A DNA stretch of 64,000 nt from Asterias rubens (Eukaryota): assembly GCF_902459465.1 (NCBI RefSeq), contig NC_047064.1:2418001-2482000 (forward strand). Reading direction: 5' to 3'. Below the pieces are notes generated by a model that ran no database searches, was not told the origin of the DNA, and saw nothing but the letters and a program-made list of their open reading frames with translations. Positions within the stretch are counted from its first letter, which is position 1. Each line of letters starts with the position of its first letter. Made by a program: the position numbers and the translations under genes. This document shows positions 9,001 to 46,371 of the stretch, piece by piece.

Positions 9001-12000
9001 GTCTTTGAAATAACCGTATGCACCCACAGCAATTGCTGGTGCCCTGTGCTTTTGCTGTGGTGCCCTCTGCTTGCAAAGTTCCAACAAAAACTTGCATTTT
9101 CCCCATAGAAGTGCCCCTTATCAGAGGAAAATTGCTGTGCCCCTTCACGAGGGAAGTTCAAGGCCTGATGACCAACATGCAAAGATTTGAGAATCTTTTG
9201 TCTGCGGCGCTGTTTCAATTCATGCACCAATCCTGTTTTTAGAAAAATGTTGTGTCATACCTTTTTCACTTTGACATCCAAAACACTTTTAATAGCCAAC
9301 AATAAGCCATTTTTAGATATGATGAACACAATACTATGACACTATTTGGTTTAGTTAAATTTGTCTGTAGACACCCAAACCACACAGTGCAAACCTAAAA
9401 TGTCCACCATTTCTCAAAAAGGCTAATGTGCTTACCTGTTCGAACATTGCCACGTAGTACTCTTGTAGGTGCCTCCGTGGTCAGGCGTTCCTTCTTGAAC
9501 CCCGCCTCCTTGGCAGACATCATGCTCTTTGGTGTTTCCCCAATAGTCCTCTTTAAGATTGGCTCTCTCCTGACTGTACAGATCTCCTGCACTGATGGCT
9601 CCTCCACCAGAGGCGTGTTCTCTCTATTCTCCTGTTCGTCATCCAACCCCGACTGTCTACCTACACCAGCAACGTCGTCTTGGTTCAAGTGATCTGATGT
9701 CTGCCCTGCTAGAGAACCCACAGGAATATCATCCAAGCGCTGCGGTTCGACCAGCCCATTTGGTAAGCCGCTTTCTTTGTTTGAAGCTGGCTCAAATGGA
9801 CTGGATCTGTCTTTGAAAGGCTCAAGGGAGTTTTCGATAAGAGAATCAGATGCTTCGGCCATTTCACAGTGATTGAAGACTTCAGATGAAGAATCTCTTT
9901 CAATAGTGTCGAGACTTGATGGTCCGTTCGATGCACTTGGAGTTATTAAATCATCAAAAGACAACAGTTCTGATGTTGACTGGGTCGATATATCATCAGT
10001 CCCAAGTTCTTGGCTAGAATGAGTTGTTGGAGACAGTGGGCAGTCATCGCCAACTGCAGGCGATGGGCTACTTCTGTGAGCACCAGAATCACTCTCAGTG
10101 CTCGATAAATCAACTTGAATAGTTTCAAGAGGTTCGACCTCAGGTTTATCAATAGACTCCAATTTAGACTCCAATTCGACGTCAACTTCCTCGATGGATT
10201 TTTCTGGAGCCATTTCAGAATCTTCCTGCAAATCCGAGAGTAAAACATCAGCTGCTGTGTTTGACAAAGCTGGCGTACTTTTACTTTGAAATTCTGAATC
10301 AGCAGACGACATCCCACTCTCAAAATTACCCATGTCTTCATATGGCAAGCTCTCAGTGGATCTGTTGTTGTTTACATTATCCTCTCTTATGTTGTGATTT
10401 GTACGGAACACATTTTCGGAAACAGCTTCATCGACTTTCAACAACTCATTTTGATCCATCGCTTGAACATAAACCATACTGACTTGAACTGGTTCTTGTT
10501 CCTTTTCCAGCGGTTCATCTATTTTCTCTGCTTGAGGGCTCAGAGTAGATTGTCCACCCGTGTCAAAAACTTTTCTCTCTGGTTCCGTGTTGTCTAATTC
10601 TGAGAAACTCTGCTCCACAGATTCACAGCAACCCAAGCTATCTTGTATGTTAGGTTCATCATGCCCTGATGAGCTGTCTCGTTCAGTTTCCTCCAAGTGA
10701 TCTTGAGCAACCGTCTCGGTATTTTCTGCAGACTCTTCTACAGCTGCATCATGTAGCACCACGTGACTTTGCTGATCTTGTCCTAACCCAGATGTGTCCT
10801 CATCATTTTGTGACTCAATATCTACAGATGTGTCTTCCCCCTTTACTTCATGGTTCTCAACAAGGTGCGACTCTAACACAGTTGCTTCATCCAGATCGTT
10901 ACCTTTAACGGTTTCAAGCAAAGGGACTTGATCTAAATGTGTACTATCAGCTGGTTCAACTTCATCACCTTGTTCGCTCTGTTCACCTTCTTGACCAACT
11001 GGATTACTTTCATCGTTTTCCAGGAATGGATTTGTGTCATCTTCCACTGGTGCATTGCTCTCAGTTTCCTCTGGTTGATCATCAGTAACAAGATTTTGTT
11101 TGCCAAGTTCACTTACTGTTAAATGATCTCGAGTTACTGGTCCACTGTCTTGTTTCATAGAGTTACTGATTGTAGATTCGCTGTCCAACCGGACTGGCTG
11201 ATCCGCATGTAATGATTCACCTTCGTCCATTGGTTCAATGTTGTAGTCTTCTGGACACTGATGGCTGTCATCTCTCAAGTTCTCGCTCACAGCCTGTTCT
11301 CTATCCATTGGTTGCACTGAGGTTTTCACTTCTCCGCTTTGTTCAAGGTTCTGGGTGAGATTTGATTGTTCACGACTCGTTATGCAATCGTGGGTCATAT
11401 GTTCAGAGTCTACAGGTTGATCAGTCTCCAATGAATCATGGTCCATGAACTCATCTTCTGACTTTGAATTACCCTCTAACACTTGATCTACTGTCAATAC
11501 TTTATCGTTACTTGTAGATGGATCATAGCCTTCATCTTGCGTCATTGGTTCACTTTTTGATGCCTGGTCTTGTAGAAAAGGTTCACATTCCATCGTTGGA
11601 GCCGACATCACTGCTTCAGATTCAAATGAATGATCCTTTTCCAAAGGTTCACTTTCCGTTGCTCGATCTTGATGAAATGGTTCACAATCCATTACTAGAT
11701 CCTGCTTCACTGGTTCACACTCCATCGCTTGATCAAGCTTCACTGGTTCACACCTCGATGACTCATCGGGATTCACTGGTTCACACTCCGGAACTTGATC
11801 CTGCTTCACTGGTAAACAGTCTGATGATTGATCCGGATTCCCCGAGTCACAGTGTAATGATTCGTCCTGCTTCACTGGTTCACATTCTGGTAATTGATCC
11901 AGCTTTACTGGTGCACACTCCACTGATTGATCCTGCTTCACTGGTTCACACTTCAAAGGGTTGTCCTGCTTCACTTGTTCACAGTCTGATGATTGATCCT

Positions 12001-15000
12001 CCTTCACTGGTGCACGGTCTGAGGATTGATCCTGCTTCACTGGTACACATTTCAATGATTCATCCTGCTGAACTGGTGCACAGTCCACTGATTGATCCTC
12101 CTTCACTGGTTCGCACTCAGATGATTCAACCTGATTCACTAGTTCACACTCCGATAAATGATCTGGATGAACTGGTTCACAGTGTGATGATTGATTTAGC
12201 TTCACTTGTTCGCACTCTAATGATTGATCCTGCTTTAGTGATTCATAGCCCAATGATTGATTCTGCATCTCGGATTTAGACTCAAATCGTTCTTTCACTG
12301 GTTCACACTCCACTGACTGATCCTCATTCTCTGGTTCACAACTCGATGAGGGACTCTGTTTCTCTGGTTCACACTCCGACGATTGTTCCTCCTTCACTGG
12401 TTCACACTCCGGCGATTGTTCCTGTTTCACTGGTTCACAGTCCATTGCTTGATCCTTTTTCACCGGTTCAAGTTCCGATGGTTGCTTTTGTTTTACTGGT
12501 TCACAATCCAAAGATTCGCCCTGTTCTACTGGTTCACATTTTGATGGTCCATCCAACTTGACTGATTCACAATCCATTGATTGATCCTCCTCAACCAGTT
12601 GTTTGTCTATCGTTTCATTCCCTGGTTCACTGTCCATCGTTTCACCTTCCGTCATTGATTGAATGTCTTTTGATTGGTATTGCTCGGCTGGTTCACTCTC
12701 AATCGGTATAGTGTGTGTAGCTGTTTCACTGATCTTTTGGGTTTGCTGTTGATCTTTATCAGTTTTTCCTATAACAGAACCCATTGCCTGATCCTCCATG
12801 ACTGTTACCTCAGTGTCACTACCCTCTGAAGACTTGGGTTCTGTATGCTCTATAAGGCCGCCTGTTTCATCACTGCATTCCCCTAATGCTATGACAAGTA
12901 CTGTATCTTCCTGATCACTGGCATGATCATTCTCATGCTGGGACGCACTGTCTTCTCCCGAACACCAAGCATCAAGATCCCGCTGTACTTCAGCATCTGG
13001 TATCTCAGCTGTGGAAATGTTTAACGACAGATTACCTGAACTCATGTGGCTGTCTTCACCATGTAATGAACCCATATCGCTGCATGAACCAAATACTTCA
13101 GGAACTGTTTCAGGGGAAATTCTTGGCTCTTCAGTGGATTTTGGGACTGTATCCTTTAAAGATTGTTGAGGATCTTCTTCTTTACTGTCAGGATCTATAA
13201 CAACAAGGGAGGATTTTTGCTGCTCAGTACAACTGTCTGATGTGCAATCGTGATCCACTTGTTCACTTGTGGATGTATCAAGAGGTGTGGAACTCGTATT
13301 TGGTATTGCTTCATATGCAGTGAGTCTCTGTTCCTGTGATTTGCTGATTGCTTCCTCTGAAAGTCTTTTTGTCTGATATGAGACTTCAAACTCGTCAGTG
13401 TCCTCTTCGAATTCCAAATGAAGCTGACCTTCACCTGAATCTGTTACAGTACCATCTTCATTTTGGACAATCTCTGAACTCTTCTGATCATCAGCACATA
13501 TATTTGGTGATTGCAGGGTATCAGTTGATGCTGCAAGACTGAGAGTTTCTGTTGGTGTCTGTTGACTGTCGCTTAGTTCTACTAAGGGTTGGTTTGATAA
13601 TGTTTCTAATCCAGCACTCTCACAAGCTACCAGTTCATGTTCCACTGATGGGAAGACAGTTTGTTCAGGCACAGTGTTACAGACTTGGCGATCACCAACT
13701 ATTTCATCACAAGGAGATCTGATGCTTTGCACTTCTCTTAACTCTAAGACCGGAGAACAACTCTCTGATTCCAAAGTAGCTCCATCCTCGGATTTGGTGT
13801 CCATTGGAGTTATTGACATTTCTAGCACTGACTTTTCCTCAATCACAGTCATCCCTTCCCTATCTTTGTTATCCAGATAATTTGGGTTTGAAGAGCCAAG
13901 GTCTAACAAAGTGATTGCTGCATCCTTAGTTTCATCACTCTCTGCAAATTGAGATCCAGATTTGAAAGTTGTTTGCAAGTACTCTTTAGGAGTTTCTCTT
14001 TCATGCCCTGCCCCAGCATTCAGTTCTGTGTTTGGTGAGGAAATCTCTGATTTGTGTAGCTCCGATGGATCAGACAATTCAGCTGATACTTTCTTAACAT
14101 TTATGACGTTAGAGACTTCTGAAGTTTCTGAGGTAGGGATAGTTTCCTTTACAAGGGTCTTTTTTGAGTCGGATCCCTTCCCTTGGTCTGTGCTTCCCTG
14201 CTGCGCTCTTGTGCCTTCTTTAATGATGACCTTCATTCCACCGCTTGCAGAATCCAGAACAGCCTCAAAGATTGCTTCAACCTGTCCAGATTCACTGTTG
14301 TGTTTCTTTAATGACCTTGTCATTGCTAGTATGTCTTTCACTTTCTTCACTCCACCTACTTTAGAAGCTGCCTTCACCCAGTAAGCAGCATCCTTTGGCT
14401 CTTCGTCATCAAGGTCCACAACAGGGGTACCACCTGTTGATGAGCCTCCTGTACTCTTCAAAACCTTTGTAGTTTTTCTGCGCTGTGATGATGTTCCGGA
14501 TTTGTGAGTAGCAGACCCATGTTGGTGAGTTTTAGTCAAATTTACCACATCTGGGAATTGTTTCATTGGCATGGATGGTTCTCCGTGGCACACTTGTTTC
14601 ATACCAGGATGGTGAAAGTTACCCGGAGGTATTCCCAACTGCTGGAGATGTTGCTGTTGTTGCTGCTGTAGCATTGATTGTAAAATGTTACTATTACACA
14701 TATTTGCACCCTGTTGGATCTTAGGATCTATCTGTTCTACCGGTGTATCCAGTCTGAAAGGCCTTGGCATTCCACGCGGGTGTTGCATTACATTCATCTT
14801 AGGATGCACGAATTGTGGATTGATAAAGCGATTTGGAAACTGATGTGTCTGGGCATAGTTGGGATGCTGTTGCATACCTGGCATCCTGGGAAAAGGGCCA
14901 CCACCCATGGCAATGTGTTGGAGCTCCTGTAGACCTCTTGACCTAATGTGGGGAAGTCCCATCTGTGGATCTGTTGGGAATTGCTCAATTTGTGAAACAT

Positions 15001-18000
15001 TTCCGGTACCGTGTTGTTGATTTGCTCTGATCATGGCTGCGCACCATTCCTGCTGCTTTTTTAACCTGGCTAACTCATCCACTGATTGATGCTCACCCAG
15101 GTTTGTTGATTTTCCGGTCGAACACACAACATTGTATGAGCCTGTTACCTTGGTCGACTCATACTGGTGCATTAGGAAAAGTCTGTCCGTGTTCATCTCA
15201 GGCACTTTGTGAGTTGATAAAGCAACTTCTGATTGTATTGTCTCAGATTCAACAGAGGCACGTCCATGTGAGCTGTCACTACTGTGTAATCGCGGTCTCT
15301 TGGTCCAGCCATCGATGGCATCCTCAATGCTCTTTGTGTTTATTCTCTTTCGCTCAGGAGAAAAAGTTGCGCCTTCTGGAAAGGGAACTACGTTCGCTAC
15401 GTGAGGCTGGTCTTCTAAATTGAGTACAGCATTCTCCAGGCACTGTATTGGGGACTCACTGATATTCTCAACGGCAGATGTGCTACCTTCACTGCTGGTC
15501 TCAGTTGCCACAGCAGCGTCAGAGAGTTTTAATGATTCCACACTTTGCTTTCTCTTTGCGCTTATCTGTGAAGGTGCTATTTCATGTTTCGAGCTGTCCG
15601 GTGTTACGTTAGGCGTGTTGTCGTTAAATAAGCCCATACCAGACATCAGGTCGCCTGCATGATGGGGTGCAGGACTTTCAGGAGGTTGAGATTGCTTTGC
15701 TGATTGGGCTTTAGCTGCAGCTGAAAGTAGACTACTTGCTGGGAAGGCACTTCCTTCAAGTGACTGGTTAAATATTTCTTGCAGTGATATATTACCAACT
15801 GGAAGTTTTGGATCTGTTTTTGTGTTGTGCATAGAGCTGGACTTGATGCTATAAGTCGGGTTGCTGTCTTTTGGGGTGACTGAGGTGCTCATTTTATCTG
15901 CTTTAGATTTGTCCACAGGTTTTGTTGACTCAATTGGTGCAGCTTCTTCCGAGTCCTGGCCAGGTACAACAAGGCTCTTTTTCGACCGGTCTTGCATATA
16001 GAAGGCCACATCATTTCTATTGGCAAACAAGGCTGGATTATTGCTCATATTAGCAGCAGTCGAGGAAGCCCTGTTTTGATTATGGTACATGTTGCTGAGT
16101 AATGGAATCACGCTCGGAGAACATCCATCCAGGTGCATGCCGACCATATTCTGTCCGTCCACAACAGGCCCATGTACCTCCCCATGAAAGGGGAATGAGA
16201 AGGAACCATGGTTATGGAGTGTTTGCATTTCATTTGGACTGACGGTAAGTTCACCGCTTGATCCGCTTCTTTTTCTCGACCTTGAAACAGTGTTGTGTGG
16301 ACTTGCAGCAGTAGGTGTGTTCTGTGGTGCTACCTCAGCACCTCGGGTAAACGGTATGTTCGGACAGCGAAGGGTTGGGCTCGAGTGTAGCACCCTTCCG
16401 TCCCAATGTTCAACAGAGCACTGATCAATAGGCGAATGGAGAGATTCCTGGCTTCCCCTGCGTGGGGATGCCTGGCGTGTAAGCTGCTGGTGGTGAAGCA
16501 GAAGCTGCTGCTGCTGGTGCTGCTGCATAAGCTCCTGATGCTGCATGTGCAAGAAGCGCATCTGAGCCTGTCTCTGATGTGACTCGAGGCTGTGCTGCTG
16601 CTGATGCAAGCGATGATCATAAGGGATGGATTCCATTGAAGGCATATGTTTGGTGATGTTTTGCGGATGGTGCTGGTGCCTGCCTTGTTGTAGTGCTAAG
16701 ATCTGCGACACTGAAAGGTTGGGATACTGAAAATCACCGCCAGTCTCGGGTTTCGACTTTGACCTTGCCCTCTTCACTCCTGCTGCATAAAAAACAACAC
16801 AGTAGGAATTTTAGAACAGACCTAGTAAAAGTTACACATCCAATATTCTGTTGACTACTCCTTGGAATTTTCACTTTTTAGAAAAAAGAAAAGAAAAAAA
16901 ATTCATTCAAAAGCATTGTGAACAAATCTAAAGCATACAGTATATACCTTTAAGATTATTTGACAAAACATTTTAATGTACAACCGCACTTTCAACAACC
17001 TGAATTGGGTCATTTTGAGATCATGACATATTGTGTTTAGTAAAAAAAGTTTAGTGTTGAAATGTTTTTCATGACTGCCTAAGGAAAAAACCCCACACCC
17101 AAACACAACAACTTTAGACTTGTTAGGATCACACTAAGTTGGCATTCCATACATATCTCTTTTCTCTTGCTTGGCTTTATCGACAAGTCTTTACAGTGCA
17201 AATTGGTTTTTTTACAATTGAATAGTATGAAATCTGTTAAATCTGTTAAAGTTGATGACAATTAGCATTTTTTGATTCATGTTTTTAATGCCCAGGCTAC
17301 AACTGTAGCAATTTATTATTGCATGGTTTAATAGTGTAACCTTCTTTTGCGATTTTTAATGATACTTTGTTTTTAATTATTCATAAAAAATAAAGAAAAT
17401 TAATAACCAATTTTGTTTATAAATAACCCACTAATTTGTTTTTTTAATTTATTTGCTTTATTTTATTTTCCTTATTTTAATATAGTGGAGGGGAAGAGAG
17501 ACAGGCAACAAGAGAGTGTGATAAATCTTGTCTCTATTAGTTAAAAGGAAGGTACATATTTGGTAATGAAAGCACACAAATTCGTCCAACAAGGGTGTTT
17601 TTTCTTTCATCATTTTCTCGCAACTTCGATGACCAATTGAGCTCAAATTTTCACAGGGTTTTATGCTTATGTTGGGATACACCAAGTGAGAAGACTGGTC
17701 TTTGACAATTACCAAATGTGTTCAGTGCCTAATGAAACTTAAAAAAAATTCAACTTGGAGACTAATACACATGTATACATGTGCATTATGCATAAACAAA
17801 TACTAAACTGTACTCATTGCCATAAAATTACAATACAATACTAGTAAACAGGTATCAAAGTCAAACATCAAAATATCTGATACCGACCTTTGCTTCTCCC
17901 AGGCGCTGCCAAGCCTCCCCCAGGCGGACCGATGTTTGTCAGGCTCTCCTCGTTCCCCTGAAGCCCCGCTGCCATGGCAACTAACTTATGTCTATGCTTG

Positions 18001-36524: not shown

Positions 36525-36640
36525 CCACATGGAGATAACCCAGCTCAGTTGATAGAGCGCCGGCACGTTAAACCGGAGGTCGTAGGTTCAAATCCCGCTC
36601 TAGTCAATTTTTCTTTGTTCAATCCAAAATCATTTATTTT
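36525..36640 (+). mobile_element. tRNA-derived SINE-like repeat
   Basis: cagctcagttgatagagcgccggcacgttaaaccggaggtcgtaggttcaaatcccgctctagtcaat. Confidence 0.75.
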
Positions 36641-37393: not shown

Positions 37394-37981
37394 ATGAATT
37401 CCAGTGCGTCTGTCTTCCTTCAAGAAAATGAGCTGGCTATCGAGATGCTCATCAACGAGCCAAGAGAGTTCGATCGCTTCCACGACTACTTCGGTCTTGC
37501 CCGCCTCGTCACTCCAGCTACTCCCGTCTCCAAGCCATTCGTCACTCAAGCTGCTCCCGTCTCCGAGCCACACTTACTCCTGGAACATGGTCAAGAAATG
37601 AAGCAAGATCAAGAATTCACGAAAGACACCGGGTTCCGTCCCTTTACCATCGACGAGCTGTCCCGAGAAAACCGTCCACAGCAAGCAAACCGCTGGGTGG
37701 TTCCCAAGCCGACATGGTGCGTCTTCTGCAAGAATAACGGCGAGAGCGAAGAGGTGTACACATCCCATGTACTAAAGAACAGCCTTGACGTGGTTGCCTG
37801 TCCCAGGCTACGAGCTTACACCTGTCCACTGTGTGGTGTCAACGGAGACACCGCACACACCGTCAAGTATTGCCCATCCAACCTCGGCAGCCTTCATCCA
37901 GCTCCGGTCAAGATTCAACCTCTTGGGGTGTACTTGAGCAGCAAGTTCATCCCCTCTGCAGGAACCAGAATTTCCGTCTGA
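37394..37981 (+). CDS. nanos: Nanos homolog copy A (195 aa, intronless)
   Basis: NOT1-interacting motif-like FDRFHDYFGLARLV and two CCHC fingers CVFCKNNGE..YTSHVLK..CPRLRAYTCPLCG..AHTVKYCP. Confidence 0.96.
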   Translation: MNSSASVFLQENELAIEMLINEPREFDRFHDYFGLARLVTPATPVSKPFVTQAAPVSEPHLLLEHGQEMKQDQEFTKDTGFRPFTIDELSRENRPQQANRWVVPKPTWCVFCKNNGESEEVYTSHVLKNSLDVVACPRLRAYTCPLCGVNGDTAHTVKYCPSNLGSLHPAPVKIQPLGVYLSSKFIPSAGTRISV

Positions 37982-38006
37982 CTCCAAGATGAACATCGTT
38001 TACACC

Positions 38007-38043
38007 GGCTCTTCTCAGAGCCAACACATATTCAAAAAAGAGA
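38007..38043 (+). other. Histone-mRNA-type 3' processing signal (16-nt stem-loop + HDE-like element) in nanos A 3'UTR
   Basis: ACACC-GGCTCT-TCTC-AGAGCC-AACACA..AAAAAAGAGA; stem 38007-38022, 25 nt after the stop; AAAGAGA at 38037-38043. Confidence 0.78.
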
Positions 38044-38765
38044 TTTGTCATGTCTGTCTAAATAAATTTTACAATAAATAGATTATAAGGATCATACCAT
38101 TAAAATAATTAAATGCTTTAACTTTACATCGGGGATGGACTACAGCCAAGACACATAACATAATATTTATTATTACATTATGAAAAAAAATAATGCCGGG
38201 TATAGTAAACTCTGGGCTGCTTTCAATCAGTAAATGTGTGAGAGGGGTTGGCCTTTGAGGGCGGGGGTTACAAAAAGCAACATTAGAGCAAACAAGGGAC
38301 ACAATAGTTTGGGGAACATCATGAATTTAGCAGGATGTACCGTAAGTTTTTTCTTCAATTTTCTTACACCCCATTCTTTGATCTATTTTGGGGGGAAACT
38401 TGCAGGACCCCCGCTATTCCCACAAAAAAAAATTGCATTGACACAATTTTTACATCATTAACTTTTTTTTCTTCCAACCTGTTTAACCATGGTTTAACAC
38501 GCTGCATATTTTGGACGATTGCATCCATTGTTATGCCGGGTGAGTTCTCTTCGGGGCATTTCCCTTTCATGATGTCCCCAACCTATTCAAGCCTTGACTT
38601 CGTATCGTGCCGTCTTCTCGTAATTTGATAAAAACGAGATAACAAACAACATTTCCATTTGTTGCATATTGCTTATTACTGGTATTCAGCTGTTGTTATT
38701 TAAAAGCAATGATCAATGCAAGTTTTTATTCGAAAGCGTAAATAAATGACTGAGCAGCGGCAGAA

Positions 38766-39269
38766 TTTAAAGGCAGTGAACACTATTGGTAAGTGCCAAA
38801 GACAAGCCTTCACAGTTGGTTTATCTCAACATATATGCATATAAATAACAAACCTGTGAAAATTTGAGCTCAATCGGTCATCAAAGTTGCGAGATAATAA
38901 TGAAAGAAGTTGTCACACGAAGTTGTGTGCGTTTAGTTCTAAACTTGAGGTCTCGAAATCAAATTCGTGGAAAATTACTTCTTTCTCGAAAACTATGGCA
39001 CTTCAGGGGGAGCCGTTTCTCACAATGTTTTATACTGATTTTTGGGGTTGAACAAAGAATTGACTAGAGTGGGATTCGAACCAACGACCTCCGGATTAAC
39101 GTGCCGGCGCTCTACCAACTGAGCTATCTAGCCCTATATTGGCGGTGTCCCTATTTTGTCAATATCTTTGTTCGGGGTGCCATACTATACTGTCAACCTC
39201 TCCCCATTACTCGTCACCAAGAAAGGTTTTATGCCAATAATTATTACCAATAGTGTCCACTGCCTTTAA
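38766..39269. mobile_element. MITE family A copy with nested tRNA-like SINE (about 39046-39185)
   Basis: MITE body interrupted after tatact and resumes after tatactatactg; duplicated at 43785-44287. Confidence 0.85.
39046..39185 (-). mobile_element. tRNA-derived SINE-like repeat (cloverleaf head 39133-39061)
   Basis: A-box TAGCTCAGTTGGTAGAGC and B-box GGTTCGAATCC, with a shared non-tRNA tail. Other copies at about 5075-5390, 34700-34800, 36525-36640, 42885-43055 and 44064-44203. Confidence 0.8.
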
Positions 39270-39606: not shown

Positions 39607-39643
39607 TTAAATCACAGGAGGGCGGTATTCCGAGAAAGACCGT

Positions 39644-39795
39644 GGGTGCGTTCGTTTAGCTTCCCTGGGTCATCCCCTGTGTGTGACGGTTTTTTTTTCC
39701 AGGACAAACGTGGGTAATTATCTGCACACGTTCGTCCTGGAAAAACAAGTCGTCACACAACGGGGTCGACCCAGGGAAGCTAAACGAACGCACCC
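39644..39795. mobile_element. Small palindromic MITE (TIR GGGTGCGTTCGTTTAGCTTCCCTGGG)
   Basis: Long inverted repeats; duplicate at 44662-44813 and a partial copy at 1-107. Confidence 0.8.
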
Positions 39796-40708
39796 TGGCT
39801 TTATGGAACCAAGTCTTTAAAATTACAGACAAAGTTACATGAAACCCCGGTTTAATAAAAGACTTCGCACGACTTCCACTGGGCTCCTTATTCATAATTA
39901 ATTTCAAGTAGCCTATGTTAATATAACCGGCAATGTGGGAGGGGGTTGGCATTTGGGAAGACGGGAAATTACAAACATTTAAAATTAGAGCAAACAATAA
40001 ACCCTCTAGCTTGGGTGGATAATAAGGGAAAAGCATAATATTGGGACGCGTTCACCGTAACTTTTTTCTTCAATTTTCATCCGTACCCCAAAGGTTTTTA
40101 CATACAATTCCCCCCCCCTCCGGGAAATTTGCATTTCGAAGACCTCCCCCACCTCTCGCTATTCCCACGTACATTGCATTGAAAACACAGAATTAACTTT
40201 TTTGCAACCTGATTTCCCTGTCCTTACTCTATGATTTCAGGAACTGGACACAATTGGTAGTTACTCAAAAAATTGTTAGCATAAAAACTTAATTGTTATT
40301 GATAAATGGAGAGCTGTTGATAAAATAAAACATTGTAAGAAACGGCTCCCTCTGAAGTATCGTAGTTTTCGAAAAAGAGTAACTTTCCACTAAAATAATT
40401 TGTTTATTTGATCTCGAGACCTCAGACCATGGAGCAATTGCTCCATGCTCAGACCCACCCGTACGACTGCCGATCCATCTGAATAAGAAGAAGGACTAAC
40501 GACACCTTTTTTTTTTTTTTAATCATTGTCGGTCGTATTCTATGTGACCCACAAGTTAGAAAGGGGTAGCCAATGGTAACTTAAAAGTGGTGCGTTTATA
40601 AGTTTTGCTCGTCAGAACTGTTTTGAAATCACACTAACTTATATTATTTGTATTCTTTAAAATCGTTATTTGCTTTATTATTTTAAATAATTAGGCAGAC
40701 ATGGCAGA

Positions 40709-40745
40709 TCTCTTTTTGGAATATGTGTTGGCTCTGATAAGAGCC
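40709..40745 (-). other. Histone-mRNA-type stem-loop + HDE-like element in nanos B 3'UTR
   Basis: Minus strand AAACC-GGCTCT-TATC-AGAGCC-AACACA..AAAAAGAGA; stem 40745-40730, 25 nt after the stop. Confidence 0.72.
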
Positions 40746-40770: not shown

Positions 40771-41349
40771 TCAGACGGAAATTCTTATTCCTGTAGATGA
40801 GATGAATTTGTTGTTCAAGTAGACCCGAAGAGGTTGAATCTTGACCGGAGCTGGATGAAGGCTGCCGAGGTTGGACGGGCAATACTTGATGGTGTGTGCG
40901 GTGTCTCCGTTGACACCACACAGTGGACAGGTGTAAGCTCGTAGCCTGGGACAGGCAACCTTGTCAAGGCTGTTCTTCAGTACATGGGATGTATACATCT
41001 CTTCGCTCTCGCCGTTATTCTTGCAGAAGACGCACCATGTCGGCTTGGAAACCACCCAGCGGTTTGCTCGCTGTGGGCGGCTCTCTCGGGACAGCTCATC
41101 GATGGTGAAGGGACGGAATCCGGTGTCTGTACTACTGTCTTGATCTTGCTTCATATCTTGACCATCTTTCGGGACGAAGTGTGGCTCGGAGACGGGAGCA
41201 GCTTGTGTGACGAATGGCTCGGAGACGGGAGTGACGAGGCGGGCAAGACCGAAGTAGTCGTGGAAGCGATCGAACTCTCTTGGCTCGTTGATGAGCATCT
41301 CGATGGCCAACTCATTTTCTTGAAGGAAGACAGACCCGCTGGAATTCAT
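40771..41349 (-). CDS. nanos: Nanos homolog copy B (192 aa, intronless)
   Basis: Same NIM and CCHC fingers; about 24 substitutions plus a 3-aa indel versus copy A by manual alignment. Confidence 0.96.
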   Translation of the reverse strand: MNSSGSVFLQENELAIEMLINEPREFDRFHDYFGLARLVTPVSEPFVTQAAPVSEPHFVPKDGQDMKQDQDSSTDTGFRPFTIDELSRESRPQRANRWVVSKPTWCVFCKNNGESEEMYTSHVLKNSLDKVACPRLRAYTCPLCGVNGDTAHTIKYCPSNLGSLHPAPVKIQPLRVYLNNKFISSTGIRISV

Positions 41350-42885: not shown

Positions 42886-45730
42886 GGGATCACACCCAAA
42901 TTACGATACAACCTGGGAAGCGGCAGCCAGGGGATCACCTTAAGGGGATGCGACTTTTTGTTTCAGATATCAATGTAAACCACAAGGGAAACTGACTGGG
43001 TAAATTTTGAAATGATTTTTGGGGTTGAACAAAGAATTGACTAGAGTGGGATTCACACTATGGAGCTGGTCACATAAATCTTATTTTCAATGTTTAAAGC
43101 ATGTTTAAACATGGAAGAAGGACGGTGTGGGTCTAACTTTTTTTGACACAACGAGTGACGTTACGAAACTTTTGGCACAACCCTCATAGATAAATGGTCA
43201 ACAGATGGCGCACTTGTTTTTCGTTCGGATATGATTCAAAGGATTTTTAATTGAGTGTTTTGAAGTGTCGTTTCGCTAGATACTGATGTACATGTATAAC
43301 TATTGTAAAACAAAACAAGAAAAACTAAATTAAAGTCAATTGAACTACTTACGACGGAATTGTGGACAAGCATTACTTTTCTTACACCCCATTCTTTGAT
43401 CTATTTTGGGGGGAAACTTGCAGGACCCCCGCTATTCCCACAAAAAAAAATTGCATTGACACAATTTTTACATCATTAACTTTTTTTTCTTCCAACCTGT
43501 TTAACCATGGTTTAACACGCTGCATATTTTGGACGATTGCATCCATTGTTATGCCGGGTGAGTTCTCTTCGGGGCATTTCCCTTTCATGATGTCCCCAAC
43601 CTATTCAAGCCTTGACTTCGTATCGTGCCGTCTTCTCGTAATTTGATAAAAACGAGATAACAAACAACATTTCCATTTGTTGCATATTGCTTATTACTGG
43701 TATTCAGCTGTTGTTATTTAAAAGCAATGATCAATGCAAGTTTTTATTCGAAAGCGTAAATAAATGACTGAGCAGCGGCAGAATTTAAAGGCAGTGAACA
43801 CTATTGGTAAGTGCCAAAGACAAGCCTTCACAGTTGGTTTATCTCAACATATATGCATATAAATAACAAACCTGTGAAAATTTGAGCTCAATCGGTCATC
43901 AAAGTTGCGAGATAATAATGAAAGAAGTTGTCACACGAAGTTGTGTGCGTTTAGTTCTAAACTTGAGGTCTCGAAATCAAATTCGTGGAAAATTACTTCT
44001 TTCTCGAAAACTATGGCACTTCAGGGGGAGCCGTTTCTCACAATGTTTTATACTGATTTTTGGGGTTGAACAAAGAATTGACTAGAGTGGGATTCGAACC
44101 AACGACCTCCGGATTAACGTGCCGGCGCTCTACCAACTGAGCTATCTAGCCCTATATTGGCGGTGTCCCTATTTTGTCAATATCTTTGTTCGGGGTGCCA
44201 TACTATACTGTCAACCTCTCCCCATTACTCGTCACCAAGAAAGGTTTTATGCCAATAATTATTACCAATAGTGTCCACTGCCTTTAAGTGCATGTAAACC
44301 CTTCTTGTTTTACAATTAGTTCCCTTTATATTGACAGTTCAATTGAAATAATTCATCTCAAAATACTTTTACGATAATGATTCAGACTAATTTCCCGTCC
44401 ACACTCTAAACAAACTCGCAAAATTTATAAACAAACCGACGAACAAGATTCCTACGTCTGTGCAAAGTAATGGTTGACGTAGGCACATTTGCTACATAAA
44501 TGTTTTCGGTTGCAATTTTGTCCAGATCAAAACTTTGCGAGCGAAAGTTACAAAGTAATGGTTGACGTAGACATAAATGTTTTCGGTTGCAATTTTGTCC
44601 AGATCAAAACTTTGCGAGCGAAGGTTAAATCACAGGAGGGCGGTATTCCGAGAAAGACCGTGGGTGCGTTCGTTTAGCTTCCCTGGGTCATCCCCTGTGT
44701 GTGACGGTTTTTTTTTCCAGGACAAACGTGGGTAATTATCTGCACACGTTCGTCCTGGAAAAACAAGTCGTCACACAACGGGGTCGACCCAGGGAAGCTA
44801 AACGAACGCACCCTGGCTTTATGGAACCAAGTCTTTAAAATTACAGACAAAGTTACATGAAACCCCGGTTTAATAAAAGACTTCGCACGACTTCCACTGG
44901 GCTCCTTATTCATAATTAATTTCAAGTAGCCTATGTTAATATAACCGGCAATGTGGGAGGGGGTTGGCATTTGGGAAGACGGGAAATTACAAACATTTAA
45001 AATTAGAGCAAACAATAAACCCTCTAGCTTGGGTGGATAATAAGGGAAAAGCATAATATTGGGACGCGTTCACCGTAACTTTTTTCTTCAATTTTCATCC
45101 GTACCCCAAAGGTTTTTACATACAATTCCCCCCCCCCTCCGGGAAATTTGCATTTCGAAGACCTCCCCCACCTCTCGCTATTCCCACGTACATTGCATTG
45201 AAAACACAGAATTAACTTTTTTGCAACCTGATTTCCCTGTCCTTACTCTATGATTTCAGGAACTGGACACAATTGGTAGTTACTCAAAAAATTGTTAGCA
45301 TAAAAACTTAATTGTTATTGATAAATGGAGAGCTGTTGATAAAATAAAACATTGTAAGAAACGGCTCCCTCTGAAGTATCGTAGTTTTCGAAAAAGAGTA
45401 ACTTTCCACTAAAATAATTTGTTTATTTGATCTCGAGACCTCAGACCATGGAGCAATTGCTCCATGCTCAGACCCACCCGTACGACTGCCGATCCATCTG
45501 AATAAGAAGAAGGACTAACGACACCTTTTTTTTTTTTTTTTTAATTATTGTCGGACGTATTCTATGTGACCCACAAGTTAGAAAGGGGTAGCCAATGGTA
45601 ACTTAAAAGTGGTGCGTTTATAAGTTTTGCTCGTCAGAACTGTTTTGAAATCACACTAACTTATATTATTTGTATTCTTTAAAATCGTTATTTGCTTTAT
45701 TATTTTAAATAATTAGGCAGACATGGCAGG

Positions 45731-45767
45731 TCTCTTTTTGGAATATGTGTTGGCTCTGATAAGAGCC
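45731..45767 (-). other. Histone-mRNA-type stem-loop + HDE-like element in nanos C 3'UTR
   Basis: Same as B; stem 45767-45752, purine element 45737-45731. Confidence 0.72.
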
Positions 45768-45792: not shown

Positions 45793-46371
45793 TCAGACGG
45801 AAATTCTTATTCCTGTAGATGAGATGAATTTGTTGTTCAAGTAGACCCGAAGAGGTTGAATCTTGACCGGAGCTGGATGAAGGCTGCCGAGGTTGGACGG
45901 GCAATACTTGATGGTGTGTGCGGTGTCTCCGTTGACACCACACAGTGGACAGGTGTAAGCTCGTAGCCTGGGACAGGCAACCTTGTCAAGGCTGTTCTTC
46001 AGTACATGGGATGTATACATCTCTTCGCTCTCGCCGTTATTCTTGCAGAAGACGCACCATGTCGGCTTGGAAACCACCCAGCGGTTTGCTCGCTGTGGGC
46101 GGCTCTCTCGGGACAGCTCATCGATGGTGAAGGGACGGAATCCGGTGTCTGTACTACTGTCTTGATCTTGCTTCATATCTTGACCATCTTTCGGGACGAA
46201 GTGTGGCTCGGAGACGGGAGCAGCTTGTGTGATGAATGGCTCGGAGACGGGAGTGACGAGGCGGGCAAGACCGAAGTAGTCGTGGAAGCGATCGAACTCT
46301 CTTGGCTCGTTGATGAGCATCTCGATGGCCAACTCATTTTCTTGAAGGAAGACAGACCCGCTGGAATTCAT
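45793..46371 (-). CDS. nanos: Nanos homolog copy C (192 aa, intronless)
   Basis: Identical to B except one V/I change (PFVTQ/PFITQ). Confidence 0.94.
   Translation of the reverse strand: MNSSGSVFLQENELAIEMLINEPREFDRFHDYFGLARLVTPVSEPFITQAAPVSEPHFVPKDGQDMKQDQDSSTDTGFRPFTIDELSRESRPQRANRWVVSKPTWCVFCKNNGESEEMYTSHVLKNSLDKVACPRLRAYTCPLCGVNGDTAHTIKYCPSNLGSLHPAPVKIQPLRVYLNNKFISSTGIRISV

What the first reader, a model, noticed from the sequence alone, without database searches (positions are those of the whole stretch)
37982..38050. A nanos gene ends like a replication-dependent histone gene: SLBP-type stem-loop plus U7-type downstream element
Seen: 25 nt after the nanos A stop lies ACACC-GGCTCT-TCTC-AGAGCC-AACACA, then AAAAAAGAGA with the AAAGAG core starting 14 nt after the stem. 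Established: replication-dependent histone mRNAs end in a 16-nt hairpin (GGCTCT-TTTC-AGAGCC type; 6-bp stem, 4-nt loop, U at loop positions 1 and 3). That hairpin has A/C-rich flanks, sits a few tens of nt after the stop and is bound by SLBP. A purine-rich HDE about 15 nt downstream pairs with U7 snRNA to direct CPSF73 cleavage without polyadenylation. Here stem sequence, loop U1/U3, flanks, spacing to the stop and HDE spacing all fit together. Inference: this nanos mRNA may be processed by SLBP/U7 into a non-polyadenylated transcript. That would put a germline determinant under histone-type control (oocyte storage, S-phase-coupled translation and decay). I know no precedent for nanos but cannot check the literature.
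Basis: partly seen in the sequence, partly recalled or inferred. Interest (0 to 1): 0.96.

Follow-up and report, generated by a model that had tools for sequence, protein, structure and literature searches.

The report
Sea-star nanos genes with histone-type ends
A family of sea-star germline (nanos) genes carries, just after the stop codon, the same two-part signal that normally gives only histone messages their tail-less ends; it has been kept across all sea stars examined, so nanos may be the first non-histone gene processed this way.

Summary
Nanos A ends with a perfect histone-type hairpin (38007-38022), 25 nt after the stop. It scores 39.7 bits on Rfam Histone3 (gathering score 34). A purine-rich AAAAAAGAGA follows at 38034-38043.

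- **Spread.** Nanos B and C carry the same signal. So does every other member examined of a sea-star-specific, mostly intronless nanos clade: Asterias amurensis, Patiria miniata, Acanthaster planci and four unnamed lineages.
- **Absence.** It is missing from a sea-urchin nanos, a sea-cucumber nanos and a divergent sea-star paralog.
- **Conservation.** Between families the 37-nt hairpin-to-purine block is 81-95% identical. The coding sequence is 69-76% identical and both flanks are at random level.
- **Match to histone genes.** In histone clusters of an Asterias-like sea star, the purine core is the same (AAGAGA) at the same offset (12-16 nt; 13-15 in nanos).

Best reading (0.65): SLBP binding plus U7-directed cleavage gives a non-polyadenylated nanos mRNA, at least as one isoform. 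No RNA data could be laid, and no U7 gene was available. One P. miniata paper hints at a longer, oligo-dT-captured form. I found no precedent in the searchable literature. Earlier notes of this scan on this same window raised related points.

The parts
37394..37981 (+). nanos A coding sequence: single exon, 195 aa, zf-nanos domain
   Evidence: ORF. Homologs carry PF05741 and sources name them nanos homolog 2-like or 3-like in Asterias amurensis.
37982..38006 (+). 25-nt spacer between the stop and the hairpin, with an A/C-rich 5' flank (ACACC)
   Evidence: The stop-to-hairpin distance is 21-36 nt across the nanos clade and 21-44 nt in 59 histone genes.
38007..38022 (+). Histone-type stem-loop GGCTCT-TCTC-AGAGCC, the presumed SLBP site
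   Evidence: Rfam RF00032 gives 39.7 bits against a gathering score of 34. It is the minimum-free-energy hairpin. The stem is invariant, and loop positions 3 (T) and 4 (C) are fixed in 13 of 13 clade members.
38023..38027 (+). 3' flank AACAC, where cleavage is predicted 4-5 nt after the stem (inference)
   Evidence: The same AACAC flank follows sea-star H2B genes in L047, L060 and L080. The cleavage position comes from established knowledge of histone pre-mRNA processing as summarised in bioRxiv 10.64898/2026.10.14.759114. It was not observed here.
38034..38043 (+). Purine-rich downstream element AAAAAAGAGA (HDE type); the AAGAGA core starts 15 nt after the stem
   Evidence: AAGAGA is conserved in all clade members whose flank is held, at offset 13-15. 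Sea-star-like histone genes have the same core at offset 12-16. It contains AAAGA, the complement of the universally conserved U7 box UCUUU (PMC5054213).
38049..38056 (+). CATGTCTG, a second downstream motif kept in all five Asterias-group nanos genes
   Evidence: Similar TGTCTG motifs follow the purine element of several histone genes, for example L034 H1, L064 H2A and L066 H1. Its function is unknown.
38061..38078 (+). Two AATAAA hexamers (38061-38066 and 38073-38078), possible back-up poly(A) signals
   Evidence: The position of the first such hexamer is not conserved across the clade: 38 to 614 nt after the stem.
40771..41349 (-). nanos B coding sequence (192 aa)
40709..40745 (-). nanos B signal: stem-loop 40730-40745 (loop TATC), spacer, then AAAAAGAGA at 40709-40717
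   Evidence: RF00032 gives 32.7 bits. Coordinates were verified.
45793..46371 (-). nanos C coding sequence (192 aa), a near-identical tandem copy of B
45731..45767 (-). nanos C signal: stem-loop 45752-45767 (loop TATC), spacer, then AAAAAGAGA at 45731-45739
   Evidence: RF00032 gives 31.1 bits. Coordinates were verified.

Best explanation
The three nanos genes in this window belong to a sea-star-specific nanos clade. Every member examined ends with a complete replication-dependent-histone 3' processing signal. That signal is an SLBP-type stem-loop 21-36 nt after the stop, followed 13-15 nt later by a purine-rich AAGAGA element of the kind that pairs with U7 snRNA.

The likely mechanism has three steps. 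SLBP binds the hairpin on the nascent transcript. U7 snRNP pairs with the AAAAGAGA element. The U7-associated CPSF73 endonuclease then cuts 4-5 nt after the stem, near 38026-38027 in nanos A. The product would be a short nanos mRNA that ends in the hairpin and has no poly(A) tail.

Such an mRNA would depend on SLBP for export, translation and decay. It would escape deadenylation-based control. Downstream AATAAA hexamers could give a minor polyadenylated read-through form.

Shown here: the signal, its deep conservation, and its identity with sea-star histone signals. Inferred: SLBP binding, U7 pairing, the cleavage site and the missing tail.
For: - **Model score.** Rfam Histone3 gives 39.7 bits (gathering score 34) for nanos A, and 32.7 and 31.1 for B and C. 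Relatives score 34.4 and 39.2 (A. amurensis), 39.3 and 36.7 (P. miniata), 31.9 and 34.4 (A. planci), and 38.1, 27.9 and 24.0 (unnamed relatives). Real sea-star histone genes score 32.8-40.2.
- **Clade-wide presence.** All 13 members examined of a strongly supported nanos clade (100/99 support) have the signal. A sea-urchin nanos, a sea-cucumber nanos and an intron-bearing sea-star paralog do not.
- **Island of conservation.** Between families, coding DNA is 69-76% identical. The stop-to-hairpin spacer is 42-64% and the next 60 nt are 52-67%, against a random baseline of 58%. The 37-nt hairpin-to-purine block is 81-95% identical.
- **Pattern of change fits SLBP binding.** The stem is invariant. 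Loop position 2 takes all four bases, while position 3 is always T and position 4 always C. [quoted passage not shown]
- **Match to histone genes.** Histone clusters from an Asterias-like sea star were identified by H2B 98% and H1 84-86% identical to A. rubens. Nine histone genes in them that my search pattern did not select all have AAGAGA 12-16 nt after the stem. Their H2B reads hairpin-AACACATTTCCCAAAGAGAGA; nanos B reads hairpin-AACACATATTCCAAAAAGAGA.
- **U7 complement.** The U7 histone-binding region has a universally conserved UCUUU box (PMC5054213), the complement of AAAGA.
Against: - **No RNA evidence.** No served RNA run holds these genes. The four runs that were laid cover both flanks like DNA, so they say nothing about 3' ends.
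- **No U7 or SLBP test.** The sea-star U7 sequence could not be obtained. SLBP binding was not tested.
- **Poly(A) signals nearby.** AATAAA lies 38-55 nt after the stem in the Asterias group.
- **A longer form in P. miniata.** A single-cell study using oligo-dT-primed 10x libraries had to lengthen the PmNanos 3'UTR annotation (bioRxiv 10.1101/2022.02.04.479164). At least some longer transcripts, probably polyadenylated, therefore exist.
- **One off-consensus loop.** One A. planci copy has A, not U, at loop position 1.
- **Ascertainment.** The histone contigs were fetched with a pattern that required AAAAGAGA, so only the non-selected genes in those clusters are an unbiased comparison.
Confidence: 0.65

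Rival explanations
1. The hairpin is a conserved SLBP-binding element that stays inside a polyadenylated nanos mRNA. The transcript ends at a downstream poly(A) site, and U7 cleavage is absent or minor. SLBP would then act on translation, storage or stability. Known parallels are the long H2A.X transcript and Drosophila maternal histone mRNAs, which are polyadenylated in an SLBP-dependent way.
For: AATAAA lies 38-55 nt after the stem in the Asterias-group genes. The PmNanos 3'UTR had to be lengthened for oligo-dT-primed single-cell data. Polyadenylated, hairpin-containing histone mRNAs are known (titles and abstracts of PMC11997800 and PMC5100578).
Against: The purine element is conserved at a fixed offset of 13-15 nt in every lineage, which an internal SLBP site would not need. 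The position of the first poly(A) hexamer is not conserved: 38 to 614 nt, and 398 and 614 nt in P. miniata. The sequence right after the purine element is at random-level identity between families.
Confidence: 0.25
2. The signal is a passive leftover with no present role in nanos expression. It would come from the tail of a retroelement or from a histone-gene fragment captured when the intronless nanos copy arose. Earlier notes of this scan report Penelope-like retroelement tails carrying a hammerhead and a histone hairpin in this genome.
For: Scan notes s1-150093 and s1-172673 report dispersed histone-type hairpins in this genome. A dispersed repeat carrying hairpin-AACACTCCCTC-AAAAGAGA is seen in sea-star-associated metagenome contigs. 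DNA-run depth spikes over the hairpin bin.
Against: The block is 81-95% identical between families whose neighbouring sequence is randomised, and it is better conserved than the coding DNA. Changes avoid the positions SLBP needs. No hammerhead appears near the nanos hairpins at E <= 1. An origin by capture would not exclude present function.
Confidence: 0.05
3. The conserved block works at the DNA level or binds some factor other than SLBP and U7. Examples would be a transcription terminator or a site for an unrelated RNA-binding protein.
For: There is no direct evidence. It is listed because neither SLBP nor U7 binding was tested.
Against: The sequence equals the metazoan histone hairpin consensus. 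It is always on the nanos sense strand, with a T-rich loop. The purine element matches that of sea-star histone genes in sequence and spacing.
Confidence: 0.05

Closest known systems
3' processing signal of replication-dependent histone genes (Rfam RF00032 hairpin plus histone downstream element), as seen in sea-star H1, H2A, H2B, H3 and H4 genes
   Same: The stem is the same GGCTCT/AGAGCC with a TNTC loop and A/C-rich flanks. The hairpin lies 21-36 nt after the stop, and the AAGAGA purine core 13-15 nt after the stem. The genes are mostly intronless and tandemly repeated. Rfam scores fall in the same range.
   Different: The host gene encodes the germline RNA-binding protein Nanos, not a histone. 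Loop position 2 varies more than in the histone genes seen here (C, A, T, G). Processing and the lack of a tail are not shown.
Histone genes with dual 3' ends, such as H2A.X, replication-dependent histone mRNAs polyadenylated in differentiated tissues (PMC5100578), and Drosophila maternal histone mRNAs (PMC11997800)
   Same: A hairpin is followed by usable poly(A) signals, so one gene can give a hairpin-ended form and a polyadenylated form. The Asterias-group nanos genes have AATAAA 38-55 nt after the stem.
   Different: Those are still histone genes. For nanos the existence of either form is not measured, beyond a hint of a longer 3'UTR in P. miniata.
Sea-urchin nanos2 3'UTR control (the GNARLE element, known to me from the literature and named in bioRxiv 10.1101/2022.08.12.503758)
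   Same: It concerns the same gene family and the same task: restricting nanos mRNA to future germ cells through its 3' end.
   Different: The S. purpuratus nanos locus examined has a long AT-rich 3' flank and no histone-type hairpin. The sea-star clade would use a quite different mechanism.
Dispersed repeats and Penelope-like retroelement tails that carry a histone hairpin in this genome (scan notes s1-150093, s1-172673)
   Same: They are a second non-histone setting for a perfect histone hairpin with an AAAAGAGA element. Both share the AACAC 3' flank.
   Different: Those are multicopy mobile-element tails. The nanos signal sits at a fixed place after a conserved coding sequence and has been kept across sea-star families. 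No hammerhead lies beside it.

Membership tests
Histone 3' UTR stem-loop (Rfam RF00032, SLBP site) | A 6-bp stem and 4-nt loop that reaches the family's gathering score on the covariance model | tested here: met
   Nanos A scores 39.7 bits against a gathering score of 34. B and C score 32.7 and 31.1, just below it; real sea-star histone genes score 32.8-40.2. The hairpin is the minimum-free-energy fold.
Histone 3' UTR stem-loop (Rfam RF00032, SLBP site) | [quoted passage not shown] | tested here: met
   Both are present in all 13 nanos hairpins examined. The criterion comes from bioRxiv 10.64898/2026.10.14.759114.
Histone 3' UTR stem-loop (Rfam RF00032, SLBP site) | Location a few tens of nt after the stop codon (median about 30 nt in metazoan histone genes) | tested here: met
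   The distance is 25 nt in the window and 21-36 nt across the clade; 59 histone genes give 21-44 nt.
Histone 3' UTR stem-loop (Rfam RF00032, SLBP site) | The host gene is a replication-dependent histone gene | tested here: not met
   The upstream ORF is a zf-nanos protein. This is the point of the finding: the element fits the family, the gene does not.
Histone 3' UTR stem-loop (Rfam RF00032, SLBP site) | Binding by SLBP | not testable with these tools
   This needs EMSA, RIP or CLIP.
U7-dependent histone pre-mRNA cleavage signal (hairpin plus downstream element) | A purine-rich downstream element about 12-18 nt after the stem that contains the complement of the U7 UCUUU box | tested here: met
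   AAAAAAGAGA lies at 38034-38043 with AAGAGA at offset 15. The offset is 13-15 in all 11 distinct nanos flanks that are held. The UCUUU box is from PMC5054213.
U7-dependent histone pre-mRNA cleavage signal (hairpin plus downstream element) | The downstream element matches that of the organism's own histone genes | tested here: met
   This was tested on histone clusters of a close relative, not on this genome. The clusters are L047, L060, L064 and L080, with H2B 98% and H1 84-86% identical to A. rubens. All 9 histone genes not selected by the search pattern have AAGAGA at offset 12-16.
U7-dependent histone pre-mRNA cleavage signal (hairpin plus downstream element) | Base pairing with this species' U7 snRNA 5' end | not testable with these tools
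   No U7 hit came from Rfam on any locus. A pattern scan of the 382 kb held found no candidate. No sea-star genome can be searched here.
U7-dependent histone pre-mRNA cleavage signal (hairpin plus downstream element) | A mature mRNA that ends 4-5 nt after the stem without a poly(A) tail | not testable with these tools
   No served RNA run holds nanos. The laid runs are DNA-like.
Ordinary polyadenylated nanos mRNA | A poly(A) signal at a conserved position that defines the 3' end | tested here: inconclusive
   AATAAA or ATTAAA first appears 38-55 nt after the stem in the Asterias group. In other lineages it appears at 67, 77, 117, 328, 398 and 614 nt. A longer PmNanos 3'UTR is reported.

The most novel reading that the evidence does not exclude
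An entire sea-star nanos gene family has moved into the replication-dependent histone expression regime. Its genes are mostly intronless, tandemly repeated and end in a hairpin plus U7 element. Their main mRNA would have no poly(A) tail, would depend on SLBP, and might be tied to S phase or made in the histone locus body. That would be the first non-histone cellular mRNA of this kind in animals, and it would shield a regulator that itself works through deadenylation from deadenylation-based control.
Probability: 0.5. Interest if true: 0.92.

Novelty: new variant of a known kind. Interest (0 to 1): 0.85.

Why it matters
Replication-dependent histone mRNAs are described as the only known cellular mRNAs without a poly(A) tail. 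SLBP cross-linking in human cells found only histone targets (PMC4604434). A conserved, complete histone-type signal on a germline determinant would break that rule. It would also show that the SLBP/U7 machinery can be recruited by other genes.

For germline biology it offers a concrete mechanism that can be tested. Sea-star nanos mRNA is first expressed broadly and then cleared to a small domain. Hairpin-ended mRNAs are degraded quickly when DNA replication stops, and they are not subject to deadenylation, which is the route Nanos itself uses on its targets (established knowledge).

The contrast with the sea urchin, whose nanos locus examined here lacks the hairpin, bears on how inductive and inherited germline specification diverged.

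There is a practical point too. A tail-less nanos mRNA would be under-counted in poly(A)-selected and oligo-dT-primed data sets, which most sea-star transcriptomes are.

Tried and rejected
- **RNA 3' ends.** Two searches for sequencing runs found no served RNA run holding nanos A or B, apart from one possible RNA run with 5% of the words. The single read-laying run used runs X1-X4. They cover the upstream and downstream flanks like DNA, so they say nothing about transcript ends. Contigs break at the hairpin, and depth spikes there because the hairpin is repeated in the genome.
- **Logan contig L001.** It ends 11 nt after the stem. It also holds 330 nt of promoter-side DNA, so I did not read it as a transcript end.
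- **U7 snRNA.** No Rfam hit came from any locus, and a pattern scan of all 382 kb held found no candidate. A blind collection scan for U7 was judged too unspecific and was not run.
- **Retroelement origin.** No hammerhead lies near the nanos hairpins at E <= 1, nor in four copies of the dispersed hairpin-bearing repeat at E <= 0.01.
- **Linked tRNA gene as a conserved neighbour.** Rejected: it is tRNA-Asn in the window and tRNA-Ala in P. miniata and A. planci.
- **Literature.** Searches combining nanos with SLBP, histone stem-loop or non-histone mRNA gave no paper linking them. Strub et al. 1984 (PMC557769) is not held.

Full report
**What is in the window**

The window holds three single-exon nanos genes: A at 37394-37981 (+), B at 40771-41349 (-) and C at 45793-46371 (-). 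B and C are near-identical copies about 5 kb apart. The nearest named relatives are Asterias amurensis nanos homolog 2-like and 3-like, at 85% and 80% protein identity. The window therefore comes from an Asterias-type sea star. The species itself is an inference.

After the TGA stop of nanos A come 25 nt of spacer. Then comes ACACC-GGCTCT-TCTC-AGAGCC-AACACA, with the hairpin at 38007-38022. AAAAAAGAGA follows at 38034-38043.

Rfam's Histone3 model scores this 39.7 bits against a gathering score of 34, with E = 3.5e-8 for the whole window. The relaxed hairpin pattern gives 7 matches (both strands counted) against 0.17 expected by chance. Six of them are the three nanos hairpins. Each nanos hairpin lies 25 nt after a nanos stop on the sense strand. 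Nanos B and C score 32.7 and 31.1 bits. The hairpin is the minimum-free-energy fold in all three sequences folded.

**The signal belongs to a whole clade**

I fetched the DNA around nanos homologs from other assemblies. Every member examined of one strongly supported clade (100/99 support, long stem branch) carries the same signal:

- A. amurensis, two genes: L002 (34.4 bits) and L016 (39.2 bits).
- Patiria miniata, two genes: L003 (39.3 bits) and L017 (36.7 bits).
- Acanthaster planci, two copies in L005 (31.9 and 34.4 bits).
- A Logan contig, L001, which is cut off after the hairpin.
- Plankton-metagenome relatives L006 (24.0 bits) and L009-L015 (27.9 bits).
- An unnamed relative, L018 (38.1 bits), in which nanos forms a tandem array of at least six copies with a 2182-bp period.

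The signal is absent from the Strongylocentrotus purpuratus nanos locus (L004). It is also absent from a Holothuria leucospilota nanos (L007) and from a divergent, intron-bearing A. amurensis nanos1-like gene (L008). In each of these three, the best match to the hairpin consensus within 400 nt of the stop is only 8-9 of 16 positions. The trait is therefore specific to one sea-star nanos family.

**It is an island of conservation**

Compare the window genes with P. miniata, A. planci, L006, L009 and L018:

| Region | Identity between families |
|---|---|
| Coding DNA | 68-76% |
| Spacer between stop and hairpin | 50-64% |
| 37-nt block from hairpin to purine element | 81-95% |
| Next 60 nt | 52-65% |
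| Random baseline (shuffled sequences) | 58-59% |

The block is more conserved than the coding sequence it follows. Part of this is built in, because I located the block with patterns for the hairpin and the purine core. The spacer between them was not constrained, and it is conserved too (AACACATATTCC, AACACACATTCC, AACACAACTTCC).

**The changes fit SLBP binding**

The stem never changes. Loop position 2 takes all four bases (TCTC, TATC, TTTC, TGTC). Position 3 is T and position 4 is C in 13 of 13. Position 1 is T in 12 of 13, with A in one A. planci copy. [quoted passage not shown] It puts metazoan histone hairpins a median of 30 nt after the stop (bioRxiv 10.64898/2026.10.14.759114). The nanos hairpins lie 21-36 nt after the stop.

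**Comparison with sea-star histone genes**

No sea-star genome can be searched with these tools. I therefore scanned the metagenome collection for the hairpin followed 10-16 nt later by AAAAGAGA. The scan returned 73 loci, and many of them are histone gene clusters.

- The H1 of L066 is 84-86% identical to A. rubens histone H1.1.
- The H2B of L080 and L060 is 98% identical to A. rubens H2B, against 92% for P. miniata and 91% for A. planci.

These contigs therefore come from an Asterias-like sea star.

In the four clusters L047, L060, L064 and L080, nine histone genes were not selected by my pattern. All nine have AAGAGA 12-16 nt after the stem. Over 59 distinct histone 3' ends, the hairpin lies 21-44 nt after the stop. 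AAGAGR lies 12-18 nt after the stem (median 15) in 55 of them. In nanos it lies at 13-15 nt (median 15).

The sea-star H2B gene reads hairpin-AACACATTTCCCAAAGAGAGA. Nanos B reads hairpin-AACACATATTCCAAAAAGAGA. Real sea-star histone hairpins score 32.8-40.2 bits on the Rfam model, against 31.1-39.7 for nanos.

By every sequence test available, the nanos signal cannot be told apart from a sea-star histone gene's signal. The U7 histone-binding region has a universally conserved UCUUU box (PMC5054213), which is the complement of the AAAGA within the nanos element.

**What is not shown**

- No RNA-level evidence could be had. No served RNA run holds nanos A or B. The four runs I laid cover both flanks like DNA.
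- The sea-star U7 sequence is not in reach.
- AATAAA hexamers lie 38-55 nt after the stem in the Asterias-group genes. Elsewhere the first hexamer is at 67-614 nt, so its position is not conserved.
[quoted passage not shown] Those libraries are oligo-dT primed, so a longer and probably polyadenylated form exists. This does not exclude a hairpin-ended main form, which such libraries would largely miss. It does support the dual-end rival.

**Rivals**

- *Hairpin kept inside a polyadenylated mRNA, without U7 cleavage (0.25).* This does not explain why the purine element is held at a fixed offset in every lineage.
- *Passive leftover from a retroelement tail or a captured histone fragment (0.05).* Earlier notes of this scan report Penelope-like element tails with a hammerhead and a histone hairpin in this genome. 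I also saw a dispersed hairpin-bearing repeat in the sea-star-associated contigs. The nanos block, however, is conserved between families whose flanks are randomised, and no hammerhead lies beside it. An origin by capture would not argue against present function.
- *A DNA-level role or another binding factor (0.05).* Nothing supports this.

**Mechanism I commit to (0.65)**

SLBP binds the hairpin and U7 snRNP pairs with AAAAGAGA. CPSF73 then cuts 4-5 nt after the stem, giving a short, tail-less nanos mRNA, with read-through to downstream poly(A) signals as a minor route. The signal and its conservation are shown. Binding, cleavage and the missing tail are inferred from the known sufficiency of such signals (established knowledge).

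**Novelty**

Replication-dependent histone mRNAs are called the only known non-polyadenylated cellular mRNAs, and SLBP cross-linking in human cells found only histone targets (PMC4604434). My searches found no paper linking nanos with SLBP or a histone hairpin. The library is limited to open-access papers and preprints. I class this as a new variant of a known kind: a known machinery with a new type of client gene. Related points on this same window were noted earlier in this scan (s1-170781, s1-170792, s1-170805).

Noticed in passing
L018:1-11920 (ENA ERZ26222911 contig): In an unnamed sea-star relative (68% protein identity to nanos A), nanos forms a head-to-tail array of at least six identical copies with a 2182-bp period. 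Each copy has the hairpin and purine element. The layout resembles tandem histone repeats.
   Followed up: partly
L018:6935-6995: Within each repeat unit, the stretch from the purine element onward (CACATATTCAAAAAAGAGATATTTCGCATTTTG...) occurs a second time about 350 nt downstream, without a hairpin.
   Followed up: no
L026, L027, L037, L038, L043, L045, L051, L052, L067, L069, L073, L074, L090 (JACSEG/JACSEK metagenome contigs): A dispersed repeat reads ACCACACC-hairpin-AACACTCCCTC-AAAAGAGA-TTTTACACATGGTTGTACCCGCAAG, with no histone ORF upstream. Its spacer equals that of the H2A gene in L064. Rfam found no hammerhead in four copies at E <= 0.01. It may correspond to the hairpin-bearing retroelement tails noted earlier in this genome.
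   Followed up: partly
L047:2177-2369 (-) and L064:3436-3628 (+): Full-length U2 snRNA genes (184 and 179 bits) sit inside histone gene clusters of the Asterias-like sea star.
   Followed up: no
window 39061-39133 (-), 44079-44151 (-), 36542-36598 (+): Two identical tRNA-Asn(GTT) genes lie in the two copies of the ~5-kb duplication, and a truncated tRNA-like piece lies upstream of nanos A. P. miniata and A. planci have a tRNA-Ala gene near nanos instead.
   Followed up: partly
window 39642-39797 and 44660-44815: A long, near-perfect inverted repeat gives sub-threshold hits to plant microRNA precursor models. It is probably a small foldback (MITE-like) element, present once in each duplicated unit.
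   Followed up: no
window 37280: Relatives' DNA contigs carry a 30-nt insertion here (GAGGAGTCCC[A/T]ATTGTCTTCAAACACCAAA). It matches the extra segment that nanos B and C have upstream of the start codon, so nanos A carries a deletion in its upstream region, or the others an insertion.
   Followed up: no
window 9395-16777 (-): A 2460-aa open reading frame, rich in glutamine and in repeated CEPVKQDQS-like units. It is probably one giant exon of an unrelated gene.
   Followed up: no
window 38049-38056, 40696-40703 (-), 45718-45725 (-); also L002 and L016: CATGTCTG lies 5-9 nt after the purine element in all five Asterias-group nanos genes. TGTCTG-like motifs follow the purine element of several histone genes too (L034 H1, L064 H2A, L066 H1). 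This may be a second shared downstream element.
   Followed up: partly
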